Below are positions 1 through 19,001 of a stretch of DNA of 64,000 bases, piece after piece (positions within the stretch are counted from its first letter, which is position 1; every line of letters begins with the position of its first letter). The stretch covers positions 186,001-250,000 of the IMG/VR virus record IMGVR_UViG_3300023175_000005; one strand, 5' to 3'. Under the pieces are notes generated by a model. It ran no database searches, was not told the origin of the DNA, and was given only the letters and a program-made list of their open reading frames with translations. Both the position numbers and the translations under genes were made by a program.

Positions 1-2
1 TA

Positions 3-716
3 CACGGAACCAAAAGAATTGGTATGAAATTGTCAGGTGGACCTGACAGTGCAATGATTCTTTATATGATTTGTAAAAAAATAACTGATGAGAATATAGA
101 TATTGAATATATTCAACCAATTACTGCTACAGCAGATGTTAAACCATACAATATAAAATTTGCCAGAAGAGTAATTGAATGGATGCGAAATAGATATCCT
201 AATATTGAAATCAAAGATACACATTGTGCTGTATGCAGATATGAAGAATATAATTCTCGACAAGAAGAATTAGTAAGGGATTTAATTTTAAACAGAGATA
301 TTGATATTACATTTGCAGGAATTACAGCAAATCCTCCCGATGAAAAAGGCAGGAATTTTTGGCCTTGCAATCCTAAATACACTAGAGCAATTGAATTAGA
401 CTTTGACGAGCATCCTGAAGACATTTCAAATGCAGATTGGAATACAAGAGCAGTTGAAAGAGACGAACCTGATGTCGAAGTTTATTGGTCTACTTGGAGA
501 GGCAAGGACGAAAAAGTTCCAATGGTAAGACCTTTTATTAATCATGATAAAAGGAAAGTAGCAGAATTATATCATCACTACGATATTATGGAATTGTTTG
601 ATATAACAAGATCTTGTGAAAACAGAGATGGTCCTGCGCTAAACGATTTCGAAGATCATTGCGAAACAGAATGTTGGTGGTGCTATGAACGTAGATGGGC
701 CTTTGGGCGAGTTTAA
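3..716 (+). CDS. QueC-like PP-loop ATP pyrophosphatase (5'-truncated; frame is open to the window edge)
   Basis: LSGGPDS PP-loop; RPFINHDK; C-terminal TRSCE...HCETECWWCYERRWAF resembles the QueC Zn site; no in-frame stop upstream of ATG 24 (HGTKRIG-MKLSGG). Confidence 0.65.
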   Translation, partial: HGTKRIGMKLSGGPDSAMILYMICKKITDENIDIEYIQPITATADVKPYNIKFARRVIEWMRNRYPNIEIKDTHCAVCRYEEYNSRQEELVRDLILNRDIDITFAGITANPPDEKGRNFWPCNPKYTRAIELDFDEHPEDISNADWNTRAVERDEPDVEVYWSTWRGKDEKVPMVRPFINHDKRKVAELYHHYDIMELFDITRSCENRDGPALNDFEDHCETECWWCYERRWAFGRV

Positions 717-1620
717 GTATACAGGCTGGCACATTGAACTAACAAACAGATGTCCACTAGCATGTCCTGCATGTATTAGAACTATGCACGGGCCTGGTTC
801 TAAGTCAGACATTGATACTAAATTACTTCTCAACTTTTTGCCTAATCCTGAAAAATATGATTACATATTTTTTCAAGGTAATTTGGGAGATCCTATATAT
901 CATCCTGATTTCCACAAAATTTCAGAACATTTTTTCCCAGCAAATGAATTACAAGTTACAACAAATGGAATGCAAACAAAAGAGTTTTGGCAAAGAGTGC
1001 TAGAAACATGGCCCGAGTCTAGTATTGTTGAACTTAGTATAGACGGCCTACAAGACACTAATAGCATATACAGAGTTAACAGTAATTGGAACAAAATACA
1101 AGAACTTTTTGAACTTATAGCAACTACTAAACGCAAATGTCAGATTATATGGAAGTATATTGTTTTTGAACACAATCATCATCAAGTTGAAGAAGCAATA
1201 GCCTTAAGTAAAAAAATAGGCATGAATGAATTTAAAATTAAAAAAAGTTGGACTATACATGATGACATGTCCAATAATGGCCAAGTTAAAGACTATTATA
1301 ATCCAGAATGGTTTGATTATGTAAAAAGAGAAACACTTGACGAATTAGCACCTTTCTGTTATACTGGAGACATGCATTATATAAATTCGCAAGGTAACTA
1401 TTATCCTTGTTGTTGGATAGATAACGACATAAGTTCTGTAGGACACATATCAGAAGGTTTAGATAGTATTAAAGATAAATTTTTAAACTTTAGTAACTTA
1501 TTAATTTGGAGTAAATGTCCTAAAGTATGCAGAAAAATGTGTTGTAAAATTAGTGATAACGATAAAGAAATGATTACACCTAACAACGTTGTTGATAGAA
1601 AAATAATAGTAAATGATTGA
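685..1620 (+). CDS. Radical SAM protein with C-terminal twitch/SPASM-like Cys cluster
   Basis: CPLACPAC (CxxxCxxC), GNLGDP, TNG, SIDG; C-terminal PFC...YYPCC...CPKVCRKMC. Confidence 0.85.
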   Translation: MNVDGPLGEFKYTGWHIELTNRCPLACPACIRTMHGPGSKSDIDTKLLLNFLPNPEKYDYIFFQGNLGDPIYHPDFHKISEHFFPANELQVTTNGMQTKEFWQRVLETWPESSIVELSIDGLQDTNSIYRVNSNWNKIQELFELIATTKRKCQIIWKYIVFEHNHHQVEEAIALSKKIGMNEFKIKKSWTIHDDMSNNGQVKDYYNPEWFDYVKRETLDELAPFCYTGDMHYINSQGNYYPCCWIDNDISSVGHISEGLDSIKDKFLNFSNLLIWSKCPKVCRKMCCKISDNDKEMITPNNVVDRKIIVND

Positions 1621-2902
1621 ATTAGGAATTTGGAGTGGTATCGGTTTACTAACTGGTCTTTTAGCCGGGTTAGTGCCAGGTGCTGGTCCATTTGTTGCTA
1701 TTGGTGTCTTATACCCGTTTTTAGCGTCAACTAGTGCGGTTAATATTATGGCGTGTTATGTTGCTATACTCATTACCACTAACTATACTAATAGTGTTAC
1801 AGCAATCTTATACGGTATACCCGGAGATGCTACTGCAATTAGCACAGCAAGATACGGACATAAAATGTTTCAAAAAGGCGCAGGCGGCCTTGCTGTAACA
1901 AGTAACGCAATTAGTAGCACCGTTGGTGTAGCATTTGCAATGTGTTTGTTTTTAGTTGCCTTGCCTAGTATTATGCATGTATTCAAATTTTATAACAGTA
2001 TTATACAAACAATTGTAATACTAGTTGCAATATGTATGATTACATTTTTTACAAAACAGAATAAACTTTTGACATTATTACTGTTTTGTTTTGGAGGATT
2101 AATATCACATCAAGGAATTGATCCGATTACATTTGATCAGTTTCTTGTTTTTAACAATTTTTATCTTAGTTTAGGAATACCTTTTGCAAGTGTAATGATT
2201 GGATTGTATCTGTTTCCTGAGATACTAAAAATTCATAACATTTCTATTTCCCAACCTAGCAAGATAAGTAAGTATGCAATAGGAAAAGGCACATTTGGTC
2301 CAAGCCTGTTAGGTAGCTTTATTGGATTTTGGTGCGGTCTTATTCCTGGCATAACGAATATTCTTGGTAGTTATGCTAGTGCAGGCATTGTAAAACGCTT
2401 TTTTAAAAAGCCTGTACTTAAAAGCATTGCTGCCGCAGAGGCTGCTAACAATAGTGGAGCATTATCCAGTTTGTTGCCTTTGCTAATCCTTGCTATACCT
2501 ATTACGGGTAGTGAAGTAATTGTGTACTACTTGATGTTAGAAAGTGGTTATCAATTTAATATAGAAAACACAGTAGACAAACTGTCTTCTATACTTTACT
2601 TTATACCGGTAGTGACATTAATATGTTTACTTTTAAGTTGGTATGGTTTTAACCTGTTAGGTCAAATAGTGTATCTTTATAAACAATATAGAGTATATGC
2701 AAATACGTTGATCCTAACTACTATAAGTGTAATAAGTGTCGTTATCTTTCCTATACACGAATGGATGGTAGCATGTATACTGATTGCAATGGTACTAGGA
2801 TATTTTCTACGAAATTACGATACGAGCCCAGTCATTTATGGATATTTCCTTAGTGACTTGTTCTATGAAAGTTTTGTAAGGACTGTTATAATATTATCTT
2901 AG
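1613..2902 (+). CDS. tctA: Tripartite tricarboxylate transporter large membrane subunit, TctA family
   Basis: Polytopic hydrophobic protein with GLVPG, YGIPGDATA, GLIPG and AAAEAANNSGA motifs typical of TctA. Confidence 0.8.
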   Translation: MIELGIWSGIGLLTGLLAGLVPGAGPFVAIGVLYPFLASTSAVNIMACYVAILITTNYTNSVTAILYGIPGDATAISTARYGHKMFQKGAGGLAVTSNAISSTVGVAFAMCLFLVALPSIMHVFKFYNSIIQTIVILVAICMITFFTKQNKLLTLLLFCFGGLISHQGIDPITFDQFLVFNNFYLSLGIPFASVMIGLYLFPEILKIHNISISQPSKISKYAIGKGTFGPSLLGSFIGFWCGLIPGITNILGSYASAGIVKRFFKKPVLKSIAAAEAANNSGALSSLLPLLILAIPITGSEVIVYYLMLESGYQFNIENTVDKLSSILYFIPVVTLICLLLSWYGFNLLGQIVYLYKQYRVYANTLILTTISVISVVIFPIHEWMVACILIAMVLGYFLRNYDTSPVIYGYFLSDLFYESFVRTVIILS

Positions 2903-2910
2903 GAGAAAAA

Positions 2911-3678
2911 ATGAAAAAATTTATCACAGCACTAACAGCAATGTTTATTGCAACATCTGCAAACGCAGAAATTTTAATTGTAAATCCAGGTTCAGAAGAG
3001 GGTGCTTTTAGACAAGTATTGACTGAAATTGGAAACAAAATTGATCATCAATTTGTACAGGCAAATAATCCTGTAACAGCATCAACCTATTTAGCAAAAG
3101 GCAATGCACTTACTATTTGGAGTAGTGAATGGCCTGGAGATCCTAAAATGCCATCAGTAGAAGTAAGTGAAGACACACTTGTTGCTCTAATGACATATGA
3201 AACTATGATGTGTAGTAGAGAATTTACAACACTAGAAGATCTTAACGGACAGGAAGTAAAGATTGCAACATGGGGTAGCGCACCAGTAGCGAAATTCTTA
3301 GGAAACTTAGAACAAGCAACAGGAGCAACATTTACAGTTGTACCATTTGGTGGTAGTGGTAGTACAACAAAAGGTTATCTTGCAGGTGATGCAGATACAG
3401 TGTTTACTATTACAACTAGACAAACTGCTATCGAAGAAGATGCAAACACAACATGTTTTGCATTTAGTGAAACAGGCGATCTAGGTTTCCGTTTTGTTGA
3501 TGCAATCAACACAGTTTGGCTAGACAACAACACTACAACAGAACTTCGTGCAATTGTTGGTAATTTGTCTATGACACCAGAATGGCAAGATAAGTTTTCA
3601 GGCACAAAAACTTATATTGGCGGAACACCAACAAATGTTGCTATGTTTGAAGAAGCGGTAGAAAACTTCTCACAATGA
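2911..3678 (+). CDS. TctC/Bug-like periplasmic substrate-binding protein
   Basis: Sec signal ending ANA; VPFGGSGSTTKGYLAGDAD resembles the TctC VPYxGGxxA...GxxD motif; follows tctA with SD AGGAG. Confidence 0.7.
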   Translation: MKKFITALTAMFIATSANAEILIVNPGSEEGAFRQVLTEIGNKIDHQFVQANNPVTASTYLAKGNALTIWSSEWPGDPKMPSVEVSEDTLVALMTYETMMCSREFTTLEDLNGQEVKIATWGSAPVAKFLGNLEQATGATFTVVPFGGSGSTTKGYLAGDADTVFTITTRQTAIEEDANTTCFAFSETGDLGFRFVDAINTVWLDNNTTTELRAIVGNLSMTPEWQDKFSGTKTYIGGTPTNVAMFEEAVENFSQ

Positions 3679-4196
3679 ACTTCGAAATTAGACGCCTTTA
3701 TGTAGATAATCTACCTAGTCAGATATATGACTTTATGCAGTCGTGTGCTGAACAAGGATTAGAAAACAATGTTTCAAAGGTGTCTATGAAGTTTGGTAAA
3801 TGGAAAGATGAAGCGTGGTGGTGTACTTGGGTTGACAATAAAATTGTTAGCATAAGCGGCTGCCACGCTTTTGACGATTATATACCAGATAGTTACAGAG
3901 TTTGTTTGCGCACTGCAACACTTAAAGAATACAGAGGAAAAGCACCAGGAAGTATAAAAAAGATGCATAATGATTTTAATTGGGGTCATATACTTCCTTA
4001 TCAAATTGAGTATGCTAAAAGCAAAGGTGCTAAAAGAATAGTTTTTACAACAAATAGTGAAGTTGACAAAAGTCCAAACAGTTTTAGGACCAACAGGGTT
4101 GTTGAAAAAGTTTTCATTCCGCAAGGATTGTGTAGACTTGTTGAAAAAGATGCAGAAGTCTTCTATACGAAGCAAAATATTTGGGAAGTGATATGA
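3675..4196 (+). CDS. GNAT-fold acetyltransferase-like protein
   Basis: RTATLKEYRG motif A-like segment; ATGA coupling on both sides. Confidence 0.5.
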   Translation: MNFEIRRLYVDNLPSQIYDFMQSCAEQGLENNVSKVSMKFGKWKDEAWWCTWVDNKIVSISGCHAFDDYIPDSYRVCLRTATLKEYRGKAPGSIKKMHNDFNWGHILPYQIEYAKSKGAKRIVFTTNSEVDKSPNSFRTNRVVEKVFIPQGLCRLVEKDAEVFYTKQNIWEVI

Positions 4197-4834
4197 ACGA
4201 ACAATTGATTGCAATGCAAAGATTAGCCATGATGGGAGATTGGTTAGAATTAGATGTTTTTCATCATGATAATCTTATGAAAGAAATTGAACCATTCAAA
4301 GATGATTGGAAACCATACAATACTAGAAAACCTAACAATAGATGGGGATTAAGTGTTACTAGTTTAGATGGTGGTTTGAGCGGCATTCCTGACTTAGACA
4401 GTCTTTCAGAATACAATAAAAAATATAATACTAATATTACCAATCATGACATAGACAAGCCTACACCTGTATATGAGGCTAGTCCTACATTGCAAAGCAT
4501 TTTAGAACCTTTTAAACCATGGCTAGGACGCTGTCATTTTTTAAAATTAGATGAAGGTGGCTTTTTTCCTGAACACTATGATATTAATAAAACAACATAT
4601 GATTACGATGAAATAAGATTGATTGGTTTTGTTCATAACTGTAATAAACATTTTTTAAAATTTGTTTATGAAGATACAATACCACAGTATGATGATAGTA
4701 ATTTATTCTACTTCAATGCTAATAAAAGACACACTGTTTTTAGCACAGTTGATGATTGTATTATGCTTGTTGTTTGTTTAAAATTTGATACAGGATGTTA
4801 TAAAGCTTTACTTGACCAATATATTTGCTCGTAG
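4193..4834 (+). CDS. 2OG-Fe(II) oxygenase, aspartyl/asparaginyl beta-hydroxylase-like
   Basis: FLKLDEGGFFPEHYD (HxD) and distal His in NKRHTVFS; start moved to ATG 4193 (ATGA overlap). Confidence 0.7.
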   Translation: MNEQLIAMQRLAMMGDWLELDVFHHDNLMKEIEPFKDDWKPYNTRKPNNRWGLSVTSLDGGLSGIPDLDSLSEYNKKYNTNITNHDIDKPTPVYEASPTLQSILEPFKPWLGRCHFLKLDEGGFFPEHYDINKTTYDYDEIRLIGFVHNCNKHFLKFVYEDTIPQYDDSNLFYFNANKRHTVFSTVDDCIMLVVCLKFDTGCYKALLDQYICS

Positions 4835-6127
4835 TTTATTGTTTACTGAATTATAATTATCAAATAATTCTTTTTCATTTGTTCCTGTAATATCTAAATT
4901 TACATTAAAATTTTTATCTTGTAAATTTTGAAATGCAGGAATGCGTATGCCTGTCTTTATTTCAGTGTTTTGTTTATTTAGATATGGTGTAATATTTTCT
5001 AAATTTTTTACTTCTTTAATTTTTCCAGGTTGTAATACAGCACATCCCCATAATAGTCTTTTTTGTAAATTTATTTCTTTTCCTTGCAACATATTACTAA
5101 TAATTTTGCCATCGTTCATTCTGTCTAAAATGTTAACAAATTGTCCTGGTCTTGGATTAAAGTCAATAGCAACCTTTCTACCATTGTTAAAATGAAAGTC
5201 AGGACCTGCAAAAAACATATCTTTGATTGCAAGTTTATCTACAATAGTTTGCAAGAAGAATTGACATAATCCTGGAAAATCTGTAGGAACTTCATCTGCG
5301 GTTACAATCCATACTGCACGTTCTCTAACAATATCACTTTTTTTACTTTTACTATGACTTTCTATTGGATTGCTATTATGATCTAATTCGTCGCCATATT
5401 TTATCTTACTATTTTTTACATAGAATGCAATGTTTACTTTTCCATCTTTTACATATCCGTAAGGACTAATACTAGGTTCTTCGCTCCAAATATATTCTTG
5501 AAACATAATTTTACACGGTTTAAAATTAAAACGTTGTGTATGTATACCTTGTCTGTTAAGATCAAAAAATTCATTGTGTATATTCTTAGATTTAATATGA
5601 TCTAAGAAATGATGCATGTTATTCCATCTTCTATATTCTATTACAGGATTGCTTGCATCGTCACCTGGATAAAAGACGTTACTTCCTGTACCAATGTCTG
5701 GTTTACTAAACATTTCTTTGTTTTTAAATGCTTTTAGTTGGTTGTAAAATGTAGGAGTAATACTTTTTGGTACTAGTACATCCATACCAACTTGTCTACA
5801 AAAGTCATCAAACTTCTGTTTGTTGCTCAATATTTCTGCTGCAAATGCACTTATATTTTTAATGCCGTAAAATGATTCTAGTTGTGCTTGAATAGGAAGT
5901 AAGTTTTCGCTAATAGTATAAATTCTGTCTACACAACTGAAACGTTTTGTAATTTCAAGAATGTCAAACCCTTTACAAATAAACACTTCTTGTGGTAGAT
6001 CTATAAAATGTTCATGATCTGGTGCAGGTTCAAAATCAGTTACAATACTACAATTTTTTCTTAATGCTGTAACAAGGCCTTCGCATTTGTTTAAACTTCG
6101 TTCATGTGCTATTATTAGTGTTTTCAT
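4808..6127 (-). CDS. ATP-grasp fold ligase
   Basis: NKQKFDDFC, KPDIGTGS, FQEYI, IDFNPRPG motifs. Confidence 0.7.
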   Translation of the reverse strand: MKTLIIAHERSLNKCEGLVTALRKNCSIVTDFEPAPDHEHFIDLPQEVFICKGFDILEITKRFSCVDRIYTISENLLPIQAQLESFYGIKNISAFAAEILSNKQKFDDFCRQVGMDVLVPKSITPTFYNQLKAFKNKEMFSKPDIGTGSNVFYPGDDASNPVIEYRRWNNMHHFLDHIKSKNIHNEFFDLNRQGIHTQRFNFKPCKIMFQEYIWSEEPSISPYGYVKDGKVNIAFYVKNSKIKYGDELDHNSNPIESHSKSKKSDIVRERAVWIVTADEVPTDFPGLCQFFLQTIVDKLAIKDMFFAGPDFHFNNGRKVAIDFNPRPGQFVNILDRMNDGKIISNMLQGKEINLQKRLLWGCAVLQPGKIKEVKNLENITPYLNKQNTEIKTGIRIPAFQNLQDKNFNVNLDITGTNEKELFDNYNSVNNKLRANILVK

Positions 6128-6761
6128 TTATATCATGCTTTATCATATTCATACACATTATATACGCATTTTCAGAATATTGCAACCTAATTTTTTCTTC
6201 TTTGTACGGATATTTTTGTATAGTTTTTGACATGTTAAATGTATTTTGTCTAGTATCTTCTTCTAATGGAATTATTGGCTTGATAACTTCAAATGAATTA
6301 TTTTTGTTCATAAAGCCGTGATAGCAATTTGCAAGCCTAATATGGCTGATGTTTTTTGCTTGATCGCAAAATTCAGTTATGTTATCACACCAATTGTCTA
6401 GTTCTGCACTGTAGACTGTAGTGTTTGAATAATCTTTTGATAAAGTTTCTTTTGTAAAACCTAGCATACCTGGATAAAATATATGATTACTAACAAACTT
6501 TTCTGAATGAACTAACCCTAAATATCCACCTAAACTTAATCCAATGTGTATGCATTCGTCCGGAAAAGGAATATCATAGATCATTTCTTGTAGTGTAACA
6601 TCATGTTCATCTTCTAATGTCCAGTACAAGCAATCTATACCGTGCGGGCTAAAGTAATCATTTAAGATTACTTCATGCCCTAATTCTTCAAATTCTTTTT
6701 TAAGTTTTAACTCACAATTACCAATGCCCCCACTTCCGTGAGATATTACAATTGGTAACAA
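6102..6761 (-). CDS. Dienelactone-hydrolase-like alpha/beta hydrolase
   Basis: HGSGG, GLSLGG nucleophile elbow, LD and HGF catalytic motifs. Confidence 0.7.
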   Translation of the reverse strand: MLPIVISHGSGGIGNCELKLKKEFEELGHEVILNDYFSPHGIDCLYWTLEDEHDVTLQEMIYDIPFPDECIHIGLSLGGYLGLVHSEKFVSNHIFYPGMLGFTKETLSKDYSNTTVYSAELDNWCDNITEFCDQAKNISHIRLANCYHGFMNKNNSFEVIKPIIPLEEDTRQNTFNMSKTIQKYPYKEEKIRLQYSENAYIMCMNMIKHDINENTNNST

Positions 6762-8738
6762 TTATGCAGCCGTACCATCGTCTAAATTAATCCAAGCACC
6801 GTTTTGATAACCTTGGAATCTGTCTACTGATTCGTTGTAAATAACCATGCCGTTGACAGCAGTTAATGCATTTCTATTTGCTGTTGTGTATTGACCAAAC
6901 TGTATGTAGCCACCTGATGTGATAGTATTTTCTACAGCATCTACTATAATTGTAGAATCGTCAGCAACTAAACTACCTTTAAACGCCGACGCTGTAACAT
7001 CACCCTCAAAAATACCTGAACCATTAACATCTAATTCTGCACTAACAGTTGCTTTACCAATACCTACTTTGATTTGATCTGAATCGTTTGTTGTAAACAT
7101 AACAAACTTTTCGTCAATTGTCAAATCGTTGTTTTTAGCAACACCTATGAATAATGCATCGTGTCCAGCTGTAATTTTGGAACTATTGATATCCCCGTCA
7201 ATATCTGATATTGCGCCAAATTTTATTTCGCCTCTGATATCATAAACTCCGTCATCTAGTGCTGCATCTGCTTTATTCTTTTTGAGATCTAATTGCATTC
7301 TTCCTTCAAAAGAATTAAATTGAATAACTTGATCACCTGTTGTTTGCGATCTGTTTTCAAATAAAACTGTTAAATCATTTGGCAACCATCTAGTAAAGTG
7401 CATTTCTGATAGTTCTACTGATGTTAAACTAACAGATGCTTCGTCGTATAAGTCACCGAATGTATTACCAAATAAATCACCTTGGAAAACTCCTGTCGGT
7501 GAACATTCAAAAGCACCTATAAATAAATTTCCTGTAAAAGTTTTATCCGCTGCATTTACTATTACTGCTGAATCATCTGCAATAACATTACCTTGCACGT
7601 TACCATTAAGTTGATTACTTACACCATCAACAAGTATTGTAGAATCTTCGCCGATTAGATTACCTTGTACATCAATGGTATATGTTTGTCCGTCAACAAT
7701 ACCAATAGTAGGAGGAAAATTAAACAATCCGCTTGCATCACCCGTTACTCTATCAAAGTTACCAGTTGTTGCGTTAACTTCTTCAAACTTTGTTCCTACT
7801 CTACCAATTTTACCTGTTCCGCTAACAACAGGGACAACATCTTTGTTGTTTAAAAAGTTTACACCGTTGACGTTAACAGAGCCACTTGGTGCAGTAATAT
7901 CTATGTTTTGATCTGGTGATGTAATAACACCACTGCCTGTGTATTCTGTATCTGCTCTTAATTTTCCTGCAACAGAATCTACCATTACAAAACTACTGTC
8001 TGAGAAAATACTACCTGTAACGTCACCATCTAACGGACCAAAAATTTGATCAGCTTCTATATTACCGTTGAAGAATGAATTTCCGGTAATTGTTAATCCT
8101 AAACCAGCAAACGTTTGATTTGTTGCATCTAACAATAATGTGCTATCATCAGCAACAATGTTGATATTATAGTTACCACCACCTACAACACCTTCACCGC
8201 CACCTCCGCCAGTACTTGGAAGATTTGTTAAAAGACTACCGTCACCTACAAAAAAGTTTGCTGTTACTGTTTTAGAGAACGTATCAACCATAATAGTTGA
8301 ATCATCTGCTACTACATCACCTGTAATACTAATATCATATGTTTGGCCTTCGAGGATGCCTGTGCCTCCTCCTCCTCCGCCTGTTACTGGTAAGTTTGTA
8401 AGTCCGCTACCGTCACCTACAAATGACCCTGCGGTAACAGAACCAGTTGCTGTCATTGTATTTGCGCTAACATTAGCAGCAGCAGCAACTGATGTAGGAC
8501 TAATAGTACCACCGATTGTGATATTACCTGTACCTACAATGTCAAAGTTATTAAGATCTAAATTTTGGCTTAGTACTGCTGGGGAACCACTTACACTACC
8601 TGTAACTCTGATACCGCCTAGTGTGCTGCCATCGCCCACGTAAATTTCTTGTGTATCAGTTGTGTAAACTAGTTCGCCTTCTGCAAACGTAACGCCCAAC
8701 CTTTCAAGGTTTGTTCCGCGGCGAAGTCTCAATGTCAT
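6762..8738 (-). CDS. Tail fibre/structural protein with internal repeats
   Basis: MTLRLRRGT N-terminus common in phage fibres; Gly/Thr/Asp-rich; six (V/I)ADDS-type repeats and three GD(G/A)SxLxNxP blocks. Confidence 0.65.
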   Translation of the reverse strand: MTLRLRRGTNLERLGVTFAEGELVYTTDTQEIYVGDGSTLGGIRVTGSVSGSPAVLSQNLDLNNFDIVGTGNITIGGTISPTSVAAAANVSANTMTATGSVTAGSFVGDGSGLTNLPVTGGGGGGTGILEGQTYDISITGDVVADDSTIMVDTFSKTVTANFFVGDGSLLTNLPSTGGGGGEGVVGGGNYNINIVADDSTLLLDATNQTFAGLGLTITGNSFFNGNIEADQIFGPLDGDVTGSIFSDSSFVMVDSVAGKLRADTEYTGSGVITSPDQNIDITAPSGSVNVNGVNFLNNKDVVPVVSGTGKIGRVGTKFEEVNATTGNFDRVTGDASGLFNFPPTIGIVDGQTYTIDVQGNLIGEDSTILVDGVSNQLNGNVQGNVIADDSAVIVNAADKTFTGNLFIGAFECSPTGVFQGDLFGNTFGDLYDEASVSLTSVELSEMHFTRWLPNDLTVLFENRSQTTGDQVIQFNSFEGRMQLDLKKNKADAALDDGVYDIRGEIKFGAISDIDGDINSSKITAGHDALFIGVAKNNDLTIDEKFVMFTTNDSDQIKVGIGKATVSAELDVNGSGIFEGDVTASAFKGSLVADDSTIIVDAVENTITSGGYIQFGQYTTANRNALTAVNGMVIYNESVDRFQGYQNGAWINLDDGTAA

Positions 8739-8746
8739 TTTATGTT

Positions 8747-8792
8747 CTCCTAAGGTGATAATAGTATTTGTATGTATTTATCACCTTAGGAG
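8747..8792 (-). promoter_or_regulatory. 15-bp perfect hairpin sequestering the SD of the fibre gene, with late promoter TAAATAC at the loop edge
   Basis: 8747-8761 CTCCTAAGGTGATAA is the reverse complement of 8778-8792; minus-strand SD AGGAG at 8747-8751; TAAATA at 8775-8780. Confidence 0.8.
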
Positions 8793-8799
8793 GTTTTGT

Positions 8800-9150
8800 T
8801 TATCGATTTAGTTTAAGGAATTTATGAACTCTTTTAGCAAGATCGCTTTTTAGTTGTTTAGTATCTAGCCTAAAATCTACGATATCAATTTGGTCTTCGT
8901 ATTGCATAAACAAATTATCAAGGGTCTCTTCGATTTGGTCAATAGTTTGTTTTTTCTTACTATCGTCAACATCGATGTCCCATTGTGTACCGTTATGAAA
9001 CTTAATTACAATTCTACTGAGGTATTCAATAGGCAGTACTTCCATTTCAATGGATTCGAATATGTCATCCCAGTGTGTTTCCGTATCTGCTTCGTAATCA
9101 ATAAGTTTCTTAGGCACTTGTTGTTGTTTTTTTCTTTTTGGTAGGAACAA
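8800..9150 (-). CDS. Hypothetical protein
   Basis: 116-aa ORF in tightly packed minus-strand run. Confidence 0.6.
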   Translation of the reverse strand: MFLPKRKKQQQVPKKLIDYEADTETHWDDIFESIEMEVLPIEYLSRIVIKFHNGTQWDIDVDDSKKKQTIDQIEETLDNLFMQYEDQIDIVDFRLDTKQLKSDLAKRVHKFLKLNR

Positions 9151-9718
9151 GTTCTTCTGCTTGTTCTCTTAAGGCTTTGGCTTCTTTAAAAAGCCTATCT
9201 GCTTGTGATCTATAACTTGCTGCTAGATCTTCATCAGATAATACACTATCTGCTGGCGCAGAGGTCTGTTGTGCAACAGGTTCTTGTACATAATCATCTG
9301 CTGGCGCTGCTTGTGTTTTTGCTTCTTTGAACTCGGGCTTAATAGCAATATCGTCTAATGCTACACCTTGTTGTTCAGCAATAATCCTATTAAGTTCATC
9401 TAACATAATCGATGTTGATCTGTCAGGAACCATCTCAATTTCATTTGTTGGAAATTTATTTAATCTTCCCGTTGAATGAAATGCTGCAAGCATATTTCTG
9501 CCATCTGGCAAAGTATCGCGAGCCATTGCTTCTGCAAGTTCGTTTGAGGTTTGACCTGCTGGTGATTCAACAAGTCTCATTAGTGCATCATGTTCGTCTG
9601 ATGGTAGTGATTCGGTCATAACAACTAAACAATTTTCAACGTCATTTGGAATTGTTCTATATGCTACTACCACAGACTTCTTATTTTTTGCAAGTCTTCC
9701 TACGTGTTTAAGTGGCAT
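9110..9718 (-). CDS. Hypothetical protein
   Basis: 202-aa ORF overlapping neighbours. Confidence 0.65.
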   Translation of the reverse strand: MPLKHVGRLAKNKKSVVVAYRTIPNDVENCLVVMTESLPSDEHDALMRLVESPAGQTSNELAEAMARDTLPDGRNMLAAFHSTGRLNKFPTNEIEMVPDRSTSIMLDELNRIIAEQQGVALDDIAIKPEFKEAKTQAAPADDYVQEPVAQQTSAPADSVLSDEDLAASYRSQADRLFKEAKALREQAEELVPTKKKKTTTSA

Positions 9719-9971
9719 CTTCTTCTACTTCCTTTTCTGGTTTTGGCGCATCTGGATCAGGTGCGTCTCCTTGTTCAGCCTGTGCTGCTTTTTGCTGTTC
9801 TTCAACATTTTTTAAGAACGCTTCTAATTTGTTGTATACTGTACCTACAGCAGCCATCTCTCCTGGTTTAAATGAACCACGCTCACTAGCGATGTCAATA
9901 ATACCTTTCATAACTGCTAGATCTTGAATGTTTAGATCCATAGGATTTGGTTGTTGTTCTTGTTCAGACAT
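9708..9971 (-). CDS. Small acidic hypothetical protein
   Basis: SD AAAGGAG upstream; 87 aa. Confidence 0.65.
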   Translation of the reverse strand: MSEQEQQPNPMDLNIQDLAVMKGIIDIASERGSFKPGEMAAVGTVYNKLEAFLKNVEEQQKAAQAEQGDAPDPDAPKPEKEVEEDAT

Positions 9972-10007: not shown

Positions 10008-10289
10008 CTAGTTTCTATATTTTAAAAGTGGACAAGCAAGTGCAAAATAACTTAGTTCTTTTGATTCTTCAAACGCTATTTTAACTTTACTTGCTAACGG
10101 TTGTTCTGCTTCATAAACAACTTCTTTATCGATATAATATCTTCCTTTAAGATTTGTTTGCACCCATTCTTCTAGTGCCTTTTGAATATTATATTTTTGG
10201 GGAATAACCATACATTCCCAATAGGGTGGACAAAAATCCACCCGTCTAATATCAAAAACGTTTAAAGGGTTAATTTTGATTTTATCCAT
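10008..10289 (-). CDS. Hypothetical protein
   Basis: 93 aa, overlaps the VWA gene stop. Confidence 0.6.
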   Translation of the reverse strand: MDKIKINPLNVFDIRRVDFCPPYWECMVIPQKYNIQKALEEWVQTNLKGRYYIDKEVVYEAEQPLASKVKIAFEESKELSYFALACPLLKYRN

Positions 10290-11601
10290 TTAATTCTTCG
10301 TAATGTGCAGTAAGACCAAATGGTGCTTCTAGTCCTTTATCATGGTGTCCATGGATAATAAAAATAGTATCACAGTAATCTGGATCACCCCAGCTACCGA
10401 AAGGATAGCCATCTGTAAACATAATAAACTTCTTAGGCGTAATATCGTTTGCTTTCATGTAGGTCCAGTTAGCATCAAAGTCAGTGCCACCGCCTCCCAT
10501 AACTTCGTAGTCGGTGAGACTTTCGCCGCAATCGGCACTAAAATCTTGTTCATTGTATACTTTAGTATCAAAGCACCACAATTTAATATTGTAATCTTTG
10601 AATTGGTCCATAATGCCTTGTACTTCGCTTAGAAAAATGTTTGCTTGTTCGTTTCCAATGGAGCCTGACATGTCAACACCAATACAAACATCAATAGTTT
10701 CTTGAAAGTTCATGCCTGGCAAAATAACACCAGTATGCCAGCCTTTGCGTGAAGGACGCATAAATGTAAAATCATTTTTTACGGTGCTTTGGATTTGCTG
10801 ACGGATGATTTCACCCCAGTTCATTTTAGGCTCAGTAAGGTCTTTAATAATTCTTGCAATTTCGCCCGGAGTGTTACCAGCGCCTGCGGCATTTGCTGCT
10901 GAAATCATGCTCTCTTTGATTTCGTCACGAATTTGTTTCATTTCTTCTTTTGAATATTTAGGTGCTTTACCCTTACCTTCGCCTTCTTCGTCTCCGTCAT
11001 CTCCTTCTAAATCAAGGTGTTCGTCTAGCATCTCTCCTAATTGTTTTAGGAATTCTTGGCCTTGTTTTTCAAACTCTGGAAACAGATCATCGTATACTTC
11101 TTCCGAAGTCCACCCTTCGTATTTAAAGTCTTGAAAACAATCAACGATGCTGGGTTTAACACCAATACGATCGCGAACAAGTAAATTGTTAACAATATAA
11201 TCTGCTGAAATATTATAAAGCATAGGATGACGATCATCTCTACGACCTAAGTGATCAAATACACAGTGTAGAATTTCGTGTGCAATTACAAACTCAATTT
11301 CTTTATTATCCATTGCATTAAAGAATTGAGTGTTAAAATACAAATTACGACCATCTACAGCGGCAGTCGGAATCCAGTCGTCAGCAGCAACAATTTTAAG
11401 ACGTGTTGCCATATTACCAAAAAATGGATGACGGAGTAGCAAACCTACTCGTGCAACAATGATACGATCTAATACTTCTTCACGCATCACAGAAAGAGCA
11501 TCTTCTGTAATATCTAGATCAGGTTGCCAATTTTTAAGTTTACTTGCAGTCTTGTCTGTAGACATTTGCATTGCAACGTATTGCGGTAAAAAATCTAACA
11601 T
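10282..11601 (-). CDS. DUF2201-type metallopeptidase plus VWA domain protein
   Basis: AHEILH zincin motif; DMSGS MIDAS, GGGGTDF, TDG. Confidence 0.85.
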   Translation of the reverse strand: MLDFLPQYVAMQMSTDKTASKLKNWQPDLDITEDALSVMREEVLDRIIVARVGLLLRHPFFGNMATRLKIVAADDWIPTAAVDGRNLYFNTQFFNAMDNKEIEFVIAHEILHCVFDHLGRRDDRHPMLYNISADYIVNNLLVRDRIGVKPSIVDCFQDFKYEGWTSEEVYDDLFPEFEKQGQEFLKQLGEMLDEHLDLEGDDGDEEGEGKGKAPKYSKEEMKQIRDEIKESMISAANAAGAGNTPGEIARIIKDLTEPKMNWGEIIRQQIQSTVKNDFTFMRPSRKGWHTGVILPGMNFQETIDVCIGVDMSGSIGNEQANIFLSEVQGIMDQFKDYNIKLWCFDTKVYNEQDFSADCGESLTDYEVMGGGGTDFDANWTYMKANDITPKKFIMFTDGYPFGSWGDPDYCDTIFIIHGHHDKGLEAPFGLTAHYEELNG

Positions 11602-11631
11602 GTCATTCCTCTTATATCAGTGCCTATATTT

Positions 11632-11659
11632 AATATAACATATTTAAGTTTTTTGTCAA
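11632..11659 (-). promoter_or_regulatory. Sigma70-type promoter with embedded late element
   Basis: TTGACA-N16-TATATT (TG-extended); TAAATA at 11641-11646. Confidence 0.65.
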
Positions 11660-11665
11660 CCATTA

Positions 11666-11702
11666 AAAAGAAAAAATGGGCAGAGTATATACCCTGCCCA
11701 TT
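11666..11702 (-). terminator. Rho-independent terminator after the MoxR gene
   Basis: AATGGGCAG/CTGCCCATT stem followed by a T-rich tract on the minus strand. Confidence 0.8.
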
Positions 11703-11714
11703 CCTGTGGCACAC

Positions 11715-12803
11715 TTACTGTTGTGCTGCCTTAATATACTTTCCATAACGATCATGGAACTCATCAAAACACTCAACAGCATCTGGATCGATTGGAAGAC
11801 TGTATTGAGTAAGAGCAAGTTTGATACCCATAACAACCAATTCCGTATCGAAATTATCCATTGCAAAACGCAAAAAGTTATTCACCTTAGCATCAAACTT
11901 TTTATCATTTTTTGCATCTGCATCTTGAAGTTCGTAACAAAGTGAAACAGTCAAGGAATACATGGCACTGATTTCTTTTGTGTTCAACTCTTTTACTTTA
12001 CCATCTAAGATGTCTGATGGATTTGGCATACTCGATGCAACTTTACGGTGTGCCATAAACTTAACAGCAAGTCCTTCGCCAACCGAACCCGCTACAAGAT
12101 CTGTAATAACTTCTTGATCATCTTCATCGTCAAGCAATTCGCTCACAAACGTCCATGTTCGTGGTGTTGCAAACGAACGACTTGGACTACGAGGATCAAA
12201 GTCAAACAAATCTTTTTTTGCAAACTGAAGATAACCAACTACATCTTTGTGTATCTTGTTAGCAACAGCCCACTCAAACCAGTCATTGAAATCAACAGCC
12301 AGTTCCAAGTGTACAAAACGGTTAGCAAGCGGAGCAGGCATGCGGTAAGTAACACCTTTGTCTGCTTCGCGGTTACCAGCCGCAATGATTACTACATTGT
12401 CAGGTAGTACATATGTACCAACCTTACGGTTAAGAATAAGTTGATATGCAGCCGCTTGTACAGCAGGTGCCGCTGAGTTCAACTCATCTAAAAACAAATA
12501 AATTGTCGAGAATTTTTTAGCAAATTCTTCGCTTGGAAGTTCTACAGGAGGAGCCCATTTCATTGTGTTATCATTTGCACTGTAGTAGGGCATACCTTTG
12601 ATATCTGTAGGTTCCCAAAGTGACAAACGAACGTCAATGAGATATGAATTAGGTGTTGAAGTTTGAATCTGTTCAACAATTTCGGATTTACCAATACCTG
12701 GAGGCCCCCACAGGAAGATTGGACGTTTTTTAGCAATTGCTCGCTGAATTCGTGATTTAGCCTTGTTAGGGCTTACAGTACGTGTAATTTCTGCAACACT
12801 CAT
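11715..12803 (-). CDS. MoxR-like AAA+ ATPase
   Basis: Walker A GPPGIGKS, Walker B LFLDE, AAGN sensor, LANRF arginine finger. Confidence 0.85.
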   Translation of the reverse strand: MSVAEITRTVSPNKAKSRIQRAIAKKRPIFLWGPPGIGKSEIVEQIQTSTPNSYLIDVRLSLWEPTDIKGMPYYSANDNTMKWAPPVELPSEEFAKKFSTIYLFLDELNSAAPAVQAAAYQLILNRKVGTYVLPDNVVIIAAGNREADKGVTYRMPAPLANRFVHLELAVDFNDWFEWAVANKIHKDVVGYLQFAKKDLFDFDPRSPSRSFATPRTWTFVSELLDDEDDQEVITDLVAGSVGEGLAVKFMAHRKVASSMPNPSDILDGKVKELNTKEISAMYSLTVSLCYELQDADAKNDKKFDAKVNNFLRFAMDNFDTELVVMGIKLALTQYSLPIDPDAVECFDEFHDRYGKYIKAAQQ

Positions 12804-18972: not shown

Positions 18973-19001
18973 AATATAACACACAAACACCCAAATGTCA
19001 A
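18973..19001 (-). promoter_or_regulatory. Sigma70-type promoter
   Basis: TTGACA-N17-TATATT. Confidence 0.75.

What the first reader, a model, noticed from the sequence alone, without database searches (positions are those of the whole stretch)
3..6761. Phage-borne biosynthesis-plus-transport island (PP-loop, radical SAM, TctA/TctC, GNAT, 2OG hydroxylase converging on ATP-grasp ligase and hydrolase)
Seen: six closely packed plus-strand genes in an otherwise minus-strand region, overlapping tail-to-tail (4808-4834) with an ATP-grasp ligase and an alpha/beta hydrolase. Established: ATP-grasp amino-acid ligases, GNATs, 2OG oxygenases and radical SAM enzymes are typical of small-peptide or RiPP gene clusters. 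Inference: a phage-encoded pathway that makes or modifies a small molecule or peptide (toxin, signal, or virion/host decoration), with its own carboxylate importer.
Basis: partly seen in the sequence, partly recalled or inferred. Interest (0 to 1): 0.8.

Follow-up and report, generated by a model that had tools for sequence, protein, structure and literature searches.

The report
Phage solute-importer plus ligase gene cassette
A large marine/salt-marsh phage carries a conserved gene set that pairs a solute uptake system with an ATP-dependent ligase and a hydroxylase; the same enzymes sit in a bacterial biosynthetic cluster, so infected cells probably import a small acid and convert it into an unknown amide product.

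Summary
The 27-nt tail-to-tail overlap (4808-4834) is exact.

The "six-gene island" is a window-edge artefact. On the 256-kb parent contig the plus-strand block runs at least 18.4 kb further upstream and is rich in radical SAM genes.

Comparative genomics splits the set:
- **Core:** TctA, the TctC-like protein and the ATP-grasp ligase stay adjacent in 23-24 of 28 non-redundant viral lineages, usually with the oxygenase.
- **Accessory:** the GNAT and the hydrolase always travel together but occur in few lineages.
- **Loosely linked:** the PP-loop and radical SAM genes.

In two phage lineages an OpuAC-type ABC binding protein plus permease fills the TctA/TctC slot. In Bdellovibrionota chromosomes the slot holds PrpD, and the same cluster there also holds aconitase, a homocitrate-synthase-like enzyme and an aminotransferase. 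This pattern suggests that the phage imports a precursor which the bacteria synthesise.

Metatranscriptomes cover TctA and the TctC-like gene most deeply. No precursor peptide was found. Substrate and product are unknown.

The parts
1..716 (+). g1: PP-loop ATP pyrophosphatase, QueC-like. Cut by the window edge; the full gene is L002:8361-9104 (247 aa).
   Evidence: SGGPDS motif. Pfam QueC E 1e-4 over the C-terminal Cys cluster; weak TilS_N and NAD-synthase hits. phrog_1550. Found within 8 kb of the ligase in only 3 of 28 viral lineages.
685..1620 (+). g2: radical SAM enzyme (311 aa) with a Cys-rich C-terminal part of SPASM/twitch type.
   Evidence: CxxxCxxC motif at residues 23-30. Pfam Radical_SAM 1.4e-5; NCBIfam W_rSAM_matur 3.3e-15 and twitch rSAM 9e-9. 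phrog_21308 9.5e-26. Lies directly upstream of TctA in the window, L006, L010, L017 and L031.
1613..2902 (+). g3: TctA-family permease (429 aa, about 10-11 hydrophobic segments). This is the large membrane subunit of a tripartite tricarboxylate-type transporter.
   Evidence: Pfam TctA 2e-57, covering profile positions 3-418 of 423. Hydropathy. Adjacent to the ligase in 23 of 28 viral lineages. Deepest coverage in four metatranscriptomes.
2911..3678 (+). g4: secreted TctC/Bug-like periplasmic substrate-binding protein (255 aa, divergent and short).
   Evidence: The N-terminus MKKFITALTAMFIATSANA-E reads as a Sec signal peptide. Atlas neighbours include TctC clusters. A profile search found distant relatives. 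The widened profile A10 hits PDB TTT binding proteins at 3.4e-14 and BugD at 7e-7. Within 0-101 bp of the ligase in nearly all lineages.
3675..4196 (+). g5: GNAT-fold acyltransferase (173 aa), an orphan family without a Pfam model.
   Evidence: AlphaFold2 pLDDT 90.8. Foldseek against PDB gives only GNAT acetyltransferases at the top, E 1.7e-6, TM 0.5-0.6. Always co-occurs with g8.
4181..4834 (+). g6: AspH-like cupin, probably an Fe(II)/2-oxoglutarate oxygenase (217 aa; the likely start is the ATG at 4193).
   Evidence: Invariant H132-x-D134 and H184. Nearest Atlas clusters carry PF05118 in 25-29% of members, and one model aligns to Asp_Arg_Hydrox models at TM 0.7. Homologues hit Cupin_2 at 1e-3 and Asp_Arg_Hydrox at 0.012. 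Translationally coupled to TctA in the compact cassettes.
4808..6127 (-). g7: ATP-grasp carboxylate-amine ligase (439 aa), L-amino-acid-ligase-like. This is the anchor gene of the cassette.
   Evidence: AlphaFold2 pLDDT 93.4, pTM 0.91. Foldseek: 3vot 2.3e-17, RizA 3.2e-17, YwfE/BacD, PurD and PurK. Atlas TM 0.68-0.70 to ATP-grasp_4/LAL_C2 clusters. Invariant K142, G146, G148, Q210 and D322-x-N324-P-R326. 117 clusters of homologues, none with a Pfam hit or a name.
6102..6761 (-). g8: α/β-hydrolase, dienelactone-hydrolase/lipase-like (219 aa). Homologues have about 27 more N-terminal residues.
   Evidence: Invariant S76 in GxSxGG, D122 and H148, plus an HGSGG oxyanion-type loop. The profile hits PDB lipases and monoacylglycerol lipases weakly, E 0.009. 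One homologue is named dienelactone hydrolase by JGI, and an L030 homologue has a weak Pfam DLH hit.
4808..4834 (.). 27-nt tail-to-tail overlap of the 3' ends of g6 (+) and g7 (-).
   Evidence: ORF coordinates. In relatives the ligase overlaps the 3' end of g4 by 11 nt instead, or the ABC permease by 14 nt.

Best explanation
The finding is the right-hand end of a large accessory biosynthetic region of a jumbo myovirus of about 256 kb.

**What is shown.** Its conserved core is a portable cassette of four genes: an AspH-like Fe/2OG oxygenase (g6), a binding-protein-dependent importer (TctA g3 plus secreted TctC-like g4) and an ATP-grasp ligase (g7). A GNAT (g5) and an α/β-hydrolase (g8) form an optional paired sub-module.

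**Proposed mechanism (inferred).** During infection g4 is exported to the periplasm of a Gram-negative host and captures a small solute, most likely a di- or tricarboxylate or a zwitterionic acid. TctA brings it into the cell. In the cytoplasm the ATP-grasp enzyme activates a carboxylate as an acyl phosphate and joins it to an amine. The oxygenase hydroxylates or otherwise oxidises the acid or the product. Where present, the GNAT and hydrolase add and remove an acyl group. The radical SAM, B12-radical SAM and methyltransferase genes upstream would decorate the same scaffold.

**Comparative logic.** The phage version imports a building block that the homologous Bdellovibrionota cluster makes itself with PrpD, aconitase subunits, an HMGL-like synthase and an aminotransferase.

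The fold assignments, the gene linkage, the interchange of supply modules and the presence in RNA libraries are shown. The substrate, the product, the order of steps and the benefit to the phage are inferred.
For: 1. Linkage. In 28 non-redundant IMG/VR lineages carrying g7, TctA is present in 23 and g4 in 24, nearly always within about 100 bp of g7, across 29-58% g7 identity. In the window's own lineage g5 and g6 lie between g4 and g7, so g4 is 1,136 bp away. Misses are truncated loci or the two ABC-type lineages. Seven further metagenome contexts agree.

2. Translational coupling. In compact cassettes inside T4-like genomes, g6-TctA-g7 have overlapping stop and start codons, with g4 convergent.

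3. Slot replacement. L049 and L063 have full 8-kb flanks and lack TctA and g4. The same convergent position, overlapping g7 by 14 nt, holds an ABC permease (BPD_transp_1, 5.5e-28) and an OpuAC binding protein (3.6e-38).

4. Bacterial counterpart. A 709,926-bp Bdellovibrionia contig flanked by GreA, MgtE and DHH genes carries homologues of g5, g6, g7 and g8. It also carries peroxiredoxin, two cupin paralogues, a B12-rSAM, a methyltransferase and rSAMs, together with PrpD, aminotransferase, HMGL-like and aconitase large and small subunits, and no TctA or TctC within the cluster. Island GC is 0.42 against 0.44 for the flanks. The same architecture occurs in two other Bdellovibrionota MAGs.

5. 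Enzyme competence. g7 keeps the D-x-N-x-R and glycine-rich-loop invariants, g6 keeps HxD...H, and g8 keeps Ser/Asp/His.

6. Expression. In four salt-marsh metatranscriptomes contig depth is 10-21 over about 1336-4118 (TctA, g4) against 0-3 over g6-g8. This unevenness is not expected from DNA carry-over.

7. Precedent for the chemistry. E-64 is built by an Fe/2OG oxygenase acting on fumarate followed by an ATP-grasp ligase (PMC12568646). β-Lactone peptides use a malic-acid warhead, cryptic methylation and hydrolysis, and ATP-grasp ligation (PMC11427300).
Against: - No substrate or product is known, and none of the enzymes has a characterised close relative (about 10-14% identity to PDB hits).
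- No TctB gene is present, so transporter function may depend on a host subunit or may differ from canonical TTT systems.
- g4 does not keep the Bug-type carboxylate-binding loop.
- OpuAC proteins typically bind quaternary amines, which fits poorly with a single common 'tricarboxylate' substrate.
- Gene order is fluid. g6 sits kilobases away in several lineages.
- Metatranscriptome contigs carry no strand information and could include some DNA.
- The direction of transfer between phage and bacterium is unresolved.
- PrpD-type and importer-type loci were compared only within 8-10 kb flanks.
Confidence: 0.55

Rival explanations
1. Unconnected auxiliary metabolic genes. The region is a hypervariable dumping ground of host-derived genes. 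TctA and TctC simply boost nutrient (for example citrate) uptake for energy, and the ligase, oxygenase, GNAT and hydrolase act on unrelated targets.
For: Gene order is shuffled between relatives, and g1, g2, g5 and g8 are often absent. tctA has been listed before as a stand-alone viral AMG of unknown role (PMC4164917). RNA depth is much higher over TctA and g4 than over g6-g8.
Against: TctA, g4 and g7 stay adjacent over 29-58% identity in 23-24 of 28 lineages, with overlapping reading frames in the compact form. An unrelated importer takes the same slot next to g7. The enzyme set is kept together in a bacterial chromosome.
Confidence: 0.17
2. A peptide- or protein-modifying system (RiPP-like or virion/host protein decoration). 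The SPASM-type radical SAMs, AspH-like hydroxylases, ATP-grasp ligase, GNAT and methyltransferases all act on a ribosomal peptide or protein, and the importer is incidental.
For: AspH-family enzymes and SPASM radical SAMs classically act on peptides. At least 11 radical SAM genes lie on this phage. Atlas neighbours of g6 include AspH proteins associated with Nif11 leader domains. ATP-grasp enzymes also make graspetides and modify ribosomal protein S6 (established knowledge).
Against: No small ORF conserved between genes was found in 20 loci. The g7 fold is closest to free-amino-acid ligases and PurD/PurK; no graspetide ligase or RimK is among the 50 listed matches. The bacterial operon is translationally coupled to HMGL-like, aconitase and aminotransferase genes, which build small molecules. 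Compact cassettes have no radical SAM gene next to them.
Confidence: 0.15
3. Nucleic-acid hypermodification. The QueC-like PP-loop enzyme and QueE-like radical SAMs make a 7-deazaguanine-type or other modified base for phage DNA or tRNA, and the neighbouring genes elaborate it.
For: g1 hits QueC and phrog_1550 'QueC-like'. The upstream radical SAM L002:7133-8341 weakly hits phrog_2076 'QueE-like' at 1.6e-6.
Against: The QueC match is borderline and limited to the C-terminal Cys cluster, and the best radical SAM matches are SPASM/peptide-type families. No QueD, FolE or transglycosylase was seen among the roughly 50 genes annotated. g1 accompanies the core in only 3 of 28 lineages. This reading does not explain the importer, the ligase or the bacterial 2-oxoacid genes.
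Confidence: 0.05

Closest known systems
Tripartite tricarboxylate transporters (TctABC, Bug/TctC binding proteins) and viral tctA AMGs
   Same: g3 is a clear TctA (2e-57). g4 is a secreted TctC/Bug-fold binding protein (3.4e-14 to solved TTT binding proteins through a widened profile). tctA domains were already noted on SUP05 viral contigs with unknown role (PMC4164917).
   Different: There is no TctB. g4 is about 60 residues shorter and lacks the Bug carboxylate-binding loop. The pair is fixed next to an ATP-grasp ligase and an oxygenase, and can be exchanged for an OpuAC-type ABC module. Neither feature is part of known TTT operons.
L-amino-acid ligases (BL00235 3VOT, RizA 4WD3, YwfE/BacD) of dipeptide antimetabolite pathways
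   Same: Same three-domain ATP-grasp architecture, and the top Foldseek hits (2e-17). The Mg/ATP motif is conserved. These enzymes belong to NRPS-independent small-peptide pathways.
   Different: Only 10-14% identity, with no Pfam or PDB sequence match. The substrates are unknown. The family is almost wholly viral, comprising 117 unnamed clusters.
E-64 pathway (Fe/2OG oxygenase on fumarate, then ATP-grasp, then amide-bond synthetase; PMC12568646) and cystargolide/belactosin β-lactone pathways (PMC11427300)
   Same: An oxygenase plus an ATP-grasp ligase act on a small di- or tricarboxylic acid. A methyltransferase and a hydrolase serve as helper steps. In the bacterial counterpart, an isopropylmalate/homocitrate-synthase-type enzyme supplies the acid.
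   Different: The resemblance is at the level of enzyme classes only, and no homology was tested. The oxygenase here is AspH/cupin-type. Many radical SAM genes are present. The acid is apparently imported rather than made.
Phage-encoded binding proteins that plug into host uptake systems (cyanophage PstS)
   Same: A phage carries a periplasmic binding protein, and in L049/L063 a binding protein plus permease without an ATPase, apparently relying on host parts.
   Different: PstS is a single nutrient-stress AMG. Here the importer is wired to dedicated cytoplasmic enzymes.

Membership tests
Tripartite tricarboxylate transporter (TTT) system | TctA large permease subunit | tested here: met
   Pfam PF01970 E 2e-57, near full-length. 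About 10-11 hydrophobic segments.
Tripartite tricarboxylate transporter (TTT) system | TctC/Bug periplasmic binding protein with signal peptide | tested here: met
   No direct Pfam or PDB hit. The widened profile A10 hits solved TTT binding proteins at 3.4e-14 and 1.9e-13, and BugD at 7e-7. An N-terminal Sec-type signal is present.
Tripartite tricarboxylate transporter (TTT) system | TctB small 4-TM subunit in the operon | tested here: not met
   No other protein of the region has a hydrophobic segment. The compact cassettes hold only g6, TctA, g7 and g4.
Tripartite tricarboxylate transporter (TTT) system | Bug-type carboxylate-binding loop (P-F-x-A-G-G-x-x-D) in the binding protein | tested here: inconclusive
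   In the HMM alignment the solved protein's PFGAGGGTD loop aligns with the widened profile's consensus 'pgspgGsf'; the window protein has PGSEEGAF at that position. The Asp is not kept, and ligand specificity cannot be read from this.
ATP-grasp superfamily (L-amino-acid-ligase type) | Three-domain ATP-grasp fold | tested here: met
   Model pLDDT 93.4. Foldseek 2.3e-17 to 3vot, with 423 PDB hits at E<=0.001, all ATP-grasp among the 50 listed.
ATP-grasp superfamily (L-amino-acid-ligase type) | Nucleotide/Mg motifs (Lys in K-P strand, Gly-rich loop, acidic-x-N-x-R) | tested here: met
   Invariant K142, G146, G148, D322, N324 and R326 in 31 sequences.
ATP-grasp superfamily (L-amino-acid-ligase type) | Sequence membership in a curated ATP-grasp or LAL family | tested here: not met
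   No Pfam, NCBIfam or PHROG hit. The best profile hit against PDB sequences is CPSase at E 0.74.
Fe(II)/2-oxoglutarate oxygenase, Asp/Asn β-hydroxylase family (PF05118) | HxD/E...H iron triad on a cupin fold | tested here: met
   H132, D134 and H184 are invariant. Homologues hit Cupin_2 at 1e-3.
Fe(II)/2-oxoglutarate oxygenase, Asp/Asn β-hydroxylase family (PF05118) | Significant match to PF05118 | tested here: inconclusive
   The window protein has no hit. Two of 7 homologues reach E 0.012. The nearest Atlas clusters carry PF05118 in 25-29% of members. The PDB 'beta-hydroxylase' hit is at E 0.26.
GNAT acyltransferases | GNAT fold | tested here: met
   pLDDT 90.8. The top 41 Foldseek PDB hits are GNAT acetyltransferases, followed by the related AHL synthases (E 1.7e-6, TM 0.5-0.6).
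GNAT acyltransferases | Acyl-CoA pyrophosphate-binding loop (R/Q-x-x-G-x-G/A) | tested here: inconclusive
   The conserved R87-G-K-A90-P-G92 lies between β4 and α3, which is the right place but not the canonical spacing.
α/β-hydrolases (dienelactone hydrolase/lipase type) | Nucleophile elbow GxSxG plus Asp and His in canonical order | tested here: met
   S76 (G-L-S-L-G-G), D122 and H148 are invariant in 23 sequences.
α/β-hydrolases (dienelactone hydrolase/lipase type) | Significant profile or structure match | tested here: inconclusive
   PDB lipase at E 0.0088 only. A distant homologue has a weak Pfam DLH hit.
RiPP biosynthetic gene cluster | Precursor peptide gene next to the modifying enzymes | tested here: not met
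   All small ORF families shared by at least 4 of 20 loci lie inside larger genes in other frames; only one, a 93-aa gene at window 10008-10289 outside the cluster, looks real.
7-deazaguanine (queuosine/archaeosine-type) modification pathway | QueC together with QueD/FolE/QueE and a transglycosylase | tested here: inconclusive
   Only borderline QueC-like (22.3 bits against a 22-bit cut-off) and QueE-like (1.6e-6) hits. None of the roughly 50 genes annotated in the window and flanks matched the other enzymes. The whole genome was not scanned.

The most novel reading that the evidence does not exclude
Diverse marine myoviruses, both jumbo and T4-like, carry a portable 'import-and-ligate' pathway. 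It would reprogram the infected cell to take up a specific environmental solute through a phage-made binding-protein-dependent transporter (TTT or OpuAC-ABC, interchangeably). An orphan ATP-grasp ligase and AspH-like oxygenase would then turn that solute into a virocell-specific bioactive amide, for example a warhead-type enzyme inhibitor, an antimetabolite or a metal chelator. This would be the phage counterpart of a so far undescribed Bdellovibrionota natural-product cluster.
Probability: 0.3. Interest if true: 0.85.

Novelty: new variant of a known kind. Interest (0 to 1): 0.68.

Why it matters
Phage auxiliary genes are usually read one at a time. tctA in viral contigs has stood as 'role unknown' since 2014 (PMC4164917).

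Here the importer is shown to be one exchangeable part of a conserved multi-gene unit. Its other parts are an unannotated and almost purely viral ATP-grasp family (117 clusters) and an oxygenase. The whole enzyme set also has a chromosomal bacterial counterpart that makes its own precursor.

This yields a directly testable hypothesis for a widespread group of marine phage genes, namely uptake followed by ATP-dependent ligation. It also points to a new small-molecule pathway shared by phages and predatory bacteria. Finally, it offers a rare case in which lytic-type environmental phages appear to carry secondary-metabolite-like chemistry rather than central-metabolism boosters.

Tried and rejected
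- **DNA similarity to cultured phages.** Megablast of 8.8 kb against GenBank phages found nothing. No cultured phage has this TctA.
- **Direct family and PDB sequence searches.** Pfam, NCBIfam, PHROG and PDB sequence searches gave nothing for g4-g8. Structure prediction, Atlas and widened profiles were needed.
- **PrpD in viral contigs.** A search with a single protein and with an alignment found none. The PrpD-type architecture is so far cellular or metagenomic only.
- **Promoter and terminator scan.** Counts were not above shuffled expectation (47 against 42.4; 6 against 4.4). It gave no information on operon ends.
- **Conserved small ORFs (precursor or carrier protein).** Only out-of-frame shadows of large genes were found.
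- **Phosphonate/phosphinothricin-like pathway.** This came from memory: homocitrate-synthase-like, aconitase, aminotransferase, GNAT, deacetylase and B12-rSAM enzymes. It was set aside because no PEP mutase was seen in any annotated flank.
- **LysW/LysX amino-group-carrier pathway.** It was set aside because no small acidic carrier ORF was found, and LysX does not appear among the 50 listed fold matches.
- **Direction of phage-bacterium transfer.** The g7 tree has no outgroup, and the PrpD-linked clade has only 78/75 support.
- **Absence of TctA from the OpuAC-type contigs.** The first TctA scan was not exhaustive, so absence is shown only within ±8 kb.

Full report
**1. Observation**

The window holds eight tightly packed ORFs in 1-6761.
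- Six lie on the + strand: 24-716, 685-1620, 1613-2902, 2911-3678, 3675-4196 and 4181-4834.
- Two lie on the - strand: 4808-6127 and 6102-6761.

The first gene is cut by the window edge. Aligning the window to a 100%-identical IMG/VR contig (L002, contig length 256,558 bp) puts window base 1 at L002 base 8389 and the true start at L002:8361, giving 247 aa.

On that contig the + strand block does not start at the window edge. It continues at least 18.4 kb upstream with about 20 more + strand genes. 'Six plus-strand genes in an otherwise minus-strand region' therefore describes the window, not the genome.

The DNA is phage DNA. It carries a T4-type family B polymerase, 40-50% identical to those of the jumbo myoviruses Phosso, Atu_ph07 and GAP32. 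It also carries a clamp loader, an exonuclease, an endolysin and an Mtd_N-type fibre gene. Nothing similar exists among cultured phages at DNA level, and none has this TctA.

**2. What each gene is**

Direct library searches identified only three genes:
- g1 is a PP-loop ATPase. It has the SGGPDS motif, a borderline QueC hit and weak TilS/NAD-synthase hits.
- g2 is a radical SAM enzyme. It has a CxxxCxxC motif, and its best matches are SPASM/twitch-type families at 3e-15.
- g3 is TctA (2e-57).

The other five have no Pfam, NCBIfam, PHROG or PDB sequence match. They were resolved as follows.

*g7 (439 aa).*
- It belongs to a family of 117 clusters at 90% identity, all unnamed and all without Pfam hits.
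- An AlphaFold2 model built from a 31-sequence alignment has pLDDT 93.4.
- Foldseek places it in the ATP-grasp fold, with L-amino-acid ligases on top: 3vot at 2.3e-17, RizA at 3.2e-17 and YwfE/BacD, followed by PurD and PurK.
- Atlas structure neighbours agree.
- The nucleotide and Mg motifs are invariant: K142, G146, G148 and D322-x-N324-P-R326.

*g5 (173 aa).* The model has pLDDT 90.8, and the top Foldseek hits are all GNAT acetyltransferases, E about 2e-6.

*g6 (217 aa).*
- It has an invariant HxD...H.
- Its nearest Atlas clusters carry PF05118 (Asp/Asn β-hydroxylase), and the model of the nearest one aligns to PF05118 models at TM about 0.7.
- Its homologues give weak Cupin_2 and PF05118 hits.

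*g8 (219 aa).* It has an invariant Ser in GxSxGG, an Asp and a His in α/β-hydrolase order, and weak lipase hits.

*g4 (255 aa).*
- It has a Sec-type signal peptide.
- A profile search of 1.84 billion representatives found distant relatives of 270-300 aa. One of them hits Pfam TctC at 3.7e-5.
- The widened profile hits solved TTT binding proteins at 3.4e-14 and BugD at 7e-7.

**3. Is it a unit?**

Relatives were collected in four ways: through TctA, through the ligase in IMG/VR, in species-representative genomes, and by exact look-up of distant ligase homologues.

In 28 non-redundant viral lineages (g7 clustered at 90% nucleotide identity; 29-58% amino-acid identity to the window), one search gives these counts:

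| Gene | Lineages with it (of 28) | Note |
|---|---|---|
| TctA (g3) | 23 | next to the ligase |
| g4 | 24 | 0-101 bp from the ligase, except in the window's own lineage, where g5 and g6 lie between (1,136 bp) |
| g6 | 20 | within 8 kb |
| g5 and g8 | 6 | always together |
| g2 | 6 | |
| g1 | 3 | |

A compact four-gene form sits among UvsX, gp41-like helicase and ThyX genes of T4-like phages. It reads g6-TctA-g7 with overlapping stop and start codons, and g4 convergent.

The core is therefore oxygenase, importer and ligase. GNAT plus hydrolase is an accessory pair. The PP-loop and radical SAM genes are neighbours rather than obligate partners. Gene order and orientation vary, but co-occurrence of the core does not.

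**4. The informative exceptions**

*An unrelated importer in the same slot.* Two viral lineages (L049, L063) have full 8-kb flanks and lack TctA and g4. In exactly the same convergent slot, overlapping the ligase by 14 nt, they carry an ABC permease (BPD_transp_1, 5.5e-28) and an OpuAC-type binding protein (3.6e-38), with no ATPase gene.

*A bacterial counterpart with synthesis genes instead.* The ligase family also occurs in Bdellovibrionota MAGs. One copy lies on a 709,926-bp contig flanked by GreA, MgtE, a DHH phosphoesterase, an S49 peptidase and GDPD, so it is a bacterial chromosome. Island GC is 0.42 against 0.44 for the flanks.

In that bacterium, homologues of g5, g6, g7 and g8 sit together with homologues of the phage's upstream genes: peroxiredoxin, two cupin paralogues, a B12-radical SAM, a methyltransferase and a radical SAM. 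These lie in one cluster with MmgE/PrpD, a class I/II aminotransferase, an HMGL-like (homocitrate/isopropylmalate-synthase-type) enzyme and aconitase large and small subunits. There is no TctA or TctC-like gene within the cluster or the flanks examined.

Two other Bdellovibrionota MAGs show the same arrangement. In one the aconitase gene lies directly upstream of g6.

PrpD was not found in the window, in its 18 kb of upstream sequence, or in IMG/VR.

*Reading.* Three alternative modules occupy the position next to the ligase: a TTT importer, an ABC importer, or enzymes that make and isomerise tricarboxylic acids and transaminate 2-oxoacids. The simplest reading is that the ligase and oxygenase work on a small acid that phages import and the bacteria synthesise.

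**5. Expression**

The phage comes from salt-marsh metagenomes, and six metatranscriptomes hold 46-69% of the sampled words of window 1-6000.

Laying the assembled contigs of four RNA libraries on 762-6761 gives depth 10-21 over about 1336-4118 in all four. That stretch covers the 3' end of g2, TctA, g4 and the 5' part of g5. Depth is 0-3 over g6, g7 and g8. Single contigs span TctA, g4 and g5.

Contigs carry no strand, and RNA libraries may contain DNA. However, a 10-fold unevenness repeated in four libraries argues for transcription of the importer genes.

**6. Mechanism proposed**

*Shown:* the folds, catalytic motifs, linkage, module exchange and presence in RNA libraries.

*Inferred:*
- g4 is secreted to the periplasm of a Gram-negative host and binds a solute.
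- TctA imports it. No TctB is encoded, so either the pair suffices or a host subunit is used.
- The ATP-grasp enzyme forms an acyl phosphate on a carboxylate and couples it to an amine.
- The AspH-like enzyme oxidises the acid or the product.
- The GNAT and hydrolase add and remove an acyl group.
- The upstream radical SAM, B12-radical SAM and methyltransferase genes decorate the scaffold.

Two known NRPS-independent pathways have the same logic:
- E-64: an Fe/2OG oxygenase acts on fumarate, then an ATP-grasp ligase adds an amino acid (PMC12568646).
- The β-lactone peptides cystargolide and belactosin: a malic-acid-type warhead, cryptic methylation and hydrolysis, and ATP-grasp ligation (PMC11427300).

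These are analogies of enzyme classes. Membership was not tested.

**7. Caveats**

- The substrate is unknown. g4 lacks the Bug carboxylate-binding loop. OpuAC proteins usually bind quaternary amines, so 'tricarboxylate' is only one possibility; a zwitterionic acid would suit both kinds of binding protein.
- Flanks were limited to 8-10 kb.
- The g7 tree separates a compact clade (100/100) from a long-form group that holds both the window clade and the bacterial sequences. It has no root, so the direction of transfer is open.
- No conserved precursor or carrier ORF exists between genes. This weakens a RiPP reading but does not exclude a target encoded elsewhere.

**8. Novelty and verdict**

tctA has been listed as a viral AMG with unknown role (PMC4164917; reviewed in PMC6359870). 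Literature searches found no description of the cassette, of the viral ATP-grasp family, of the importer exchange or of the Bdellovibrionota counterpart.

It is a new variant of known kinds of thing, namely phage auxiliary gene clusters and phage-encoded transport components. It comes with a clear, testable hypothesis.

I rate interest at 0.68.

Noticed in passing
window 18998-20233(-), 37225-38394(-), 38273-39394(-); L002:1639-3345, 7133-8341; L022:1424-2644, 4746-5819, 5806-6969, 6966-8144, 8116-9969: This phage carries at least 11 radical SAM genes, two of them B12-binding. Most belong to one expanded family (phrog_14086). The Bdellovibrionales MAG locus L041 has a comparable pile-up. This is an unusually high number for one virus.
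   Followed up: partly
L022:1424-2644, L022:5806-6969, L002:7133-8341: In several of these radical SAM proteins the SPASM-type Cys domain is matched N-terminal to the radical SAM core (for example residues 7-69 against 113-269). This is the reverse of the usual order.
   Followed up: no
window 6762-8738 (-): A 658-aa protein with an N-terminal Mtd_N (major tropism determinant) domain (7.6e-9). It has repeated 'GDGS-LTNLP-TGGGGG' segments and lies immediately downstream of the hydrolase gene. It is probably a tail fibre. Whether a diversity-generating retroelement targets it was not checked.
   Followed up: no
L002:475-1152 and 1149-1688 (upstream of the window); paralogues in L007, L008, L010, L017, L026, L030, L033, L034: Two further unannotated gene families next to the peroxiredoxin share an invariant G..HxD...H...R pattern. 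They align to g6 by hhalign (E 6.7e-4, probability 27%), so the cluster probably holds three paralogous cupin oxygenases.
   Followed up: partly
L049:9310-11183 and L063:9324-11201: A phage-encoded OpuAC binding protein plus ABC permease without any ATPase gene within 8 kb. Function would presumably depend on a host ATPase.
   Followed up: partly
L036, L038 (FZLS01000099.1, FZLS01000023.1): Contigs filed under 'Rhodobacteraceae bacterium Water_Bin34' have 34% GC and carry the compact phage cassette. They are probably phage contigs binned into a bacterial MAG.
   Followed up: no
L030:7489-8819: In one metagenome contig the ligase gene is split into two overlapping ORFs of 191 and 272 aa. This is either a frameshift or an assembly error.
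   Followed up: no
window 4536: One metatranscriptome contig (run X14, depth 2.7) has an extra T after 4536, inside g6, which would shift the frame. It was seen in one contig only.
   Followed up: no
window 10282-12803 (-): A pair of genes, phrog_1314 (439 aa) and a MoxR/CobS-like AAA ATPase (362 aa), is conserved at 68-81% identity beside the module in L006, L010 and L011. Together with the 202-aa gene at 9110-9718, it forms the stable right-hand neighbourhood.
   Followed up: no
window 6102-6761 (-): The window's hydrolase starts about 27 residues later than most homologues. Its TTG start abuts the stop of the fibre gene, so the N-terminal strands may be missing or the start may be mis-set.
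   Followed up: no
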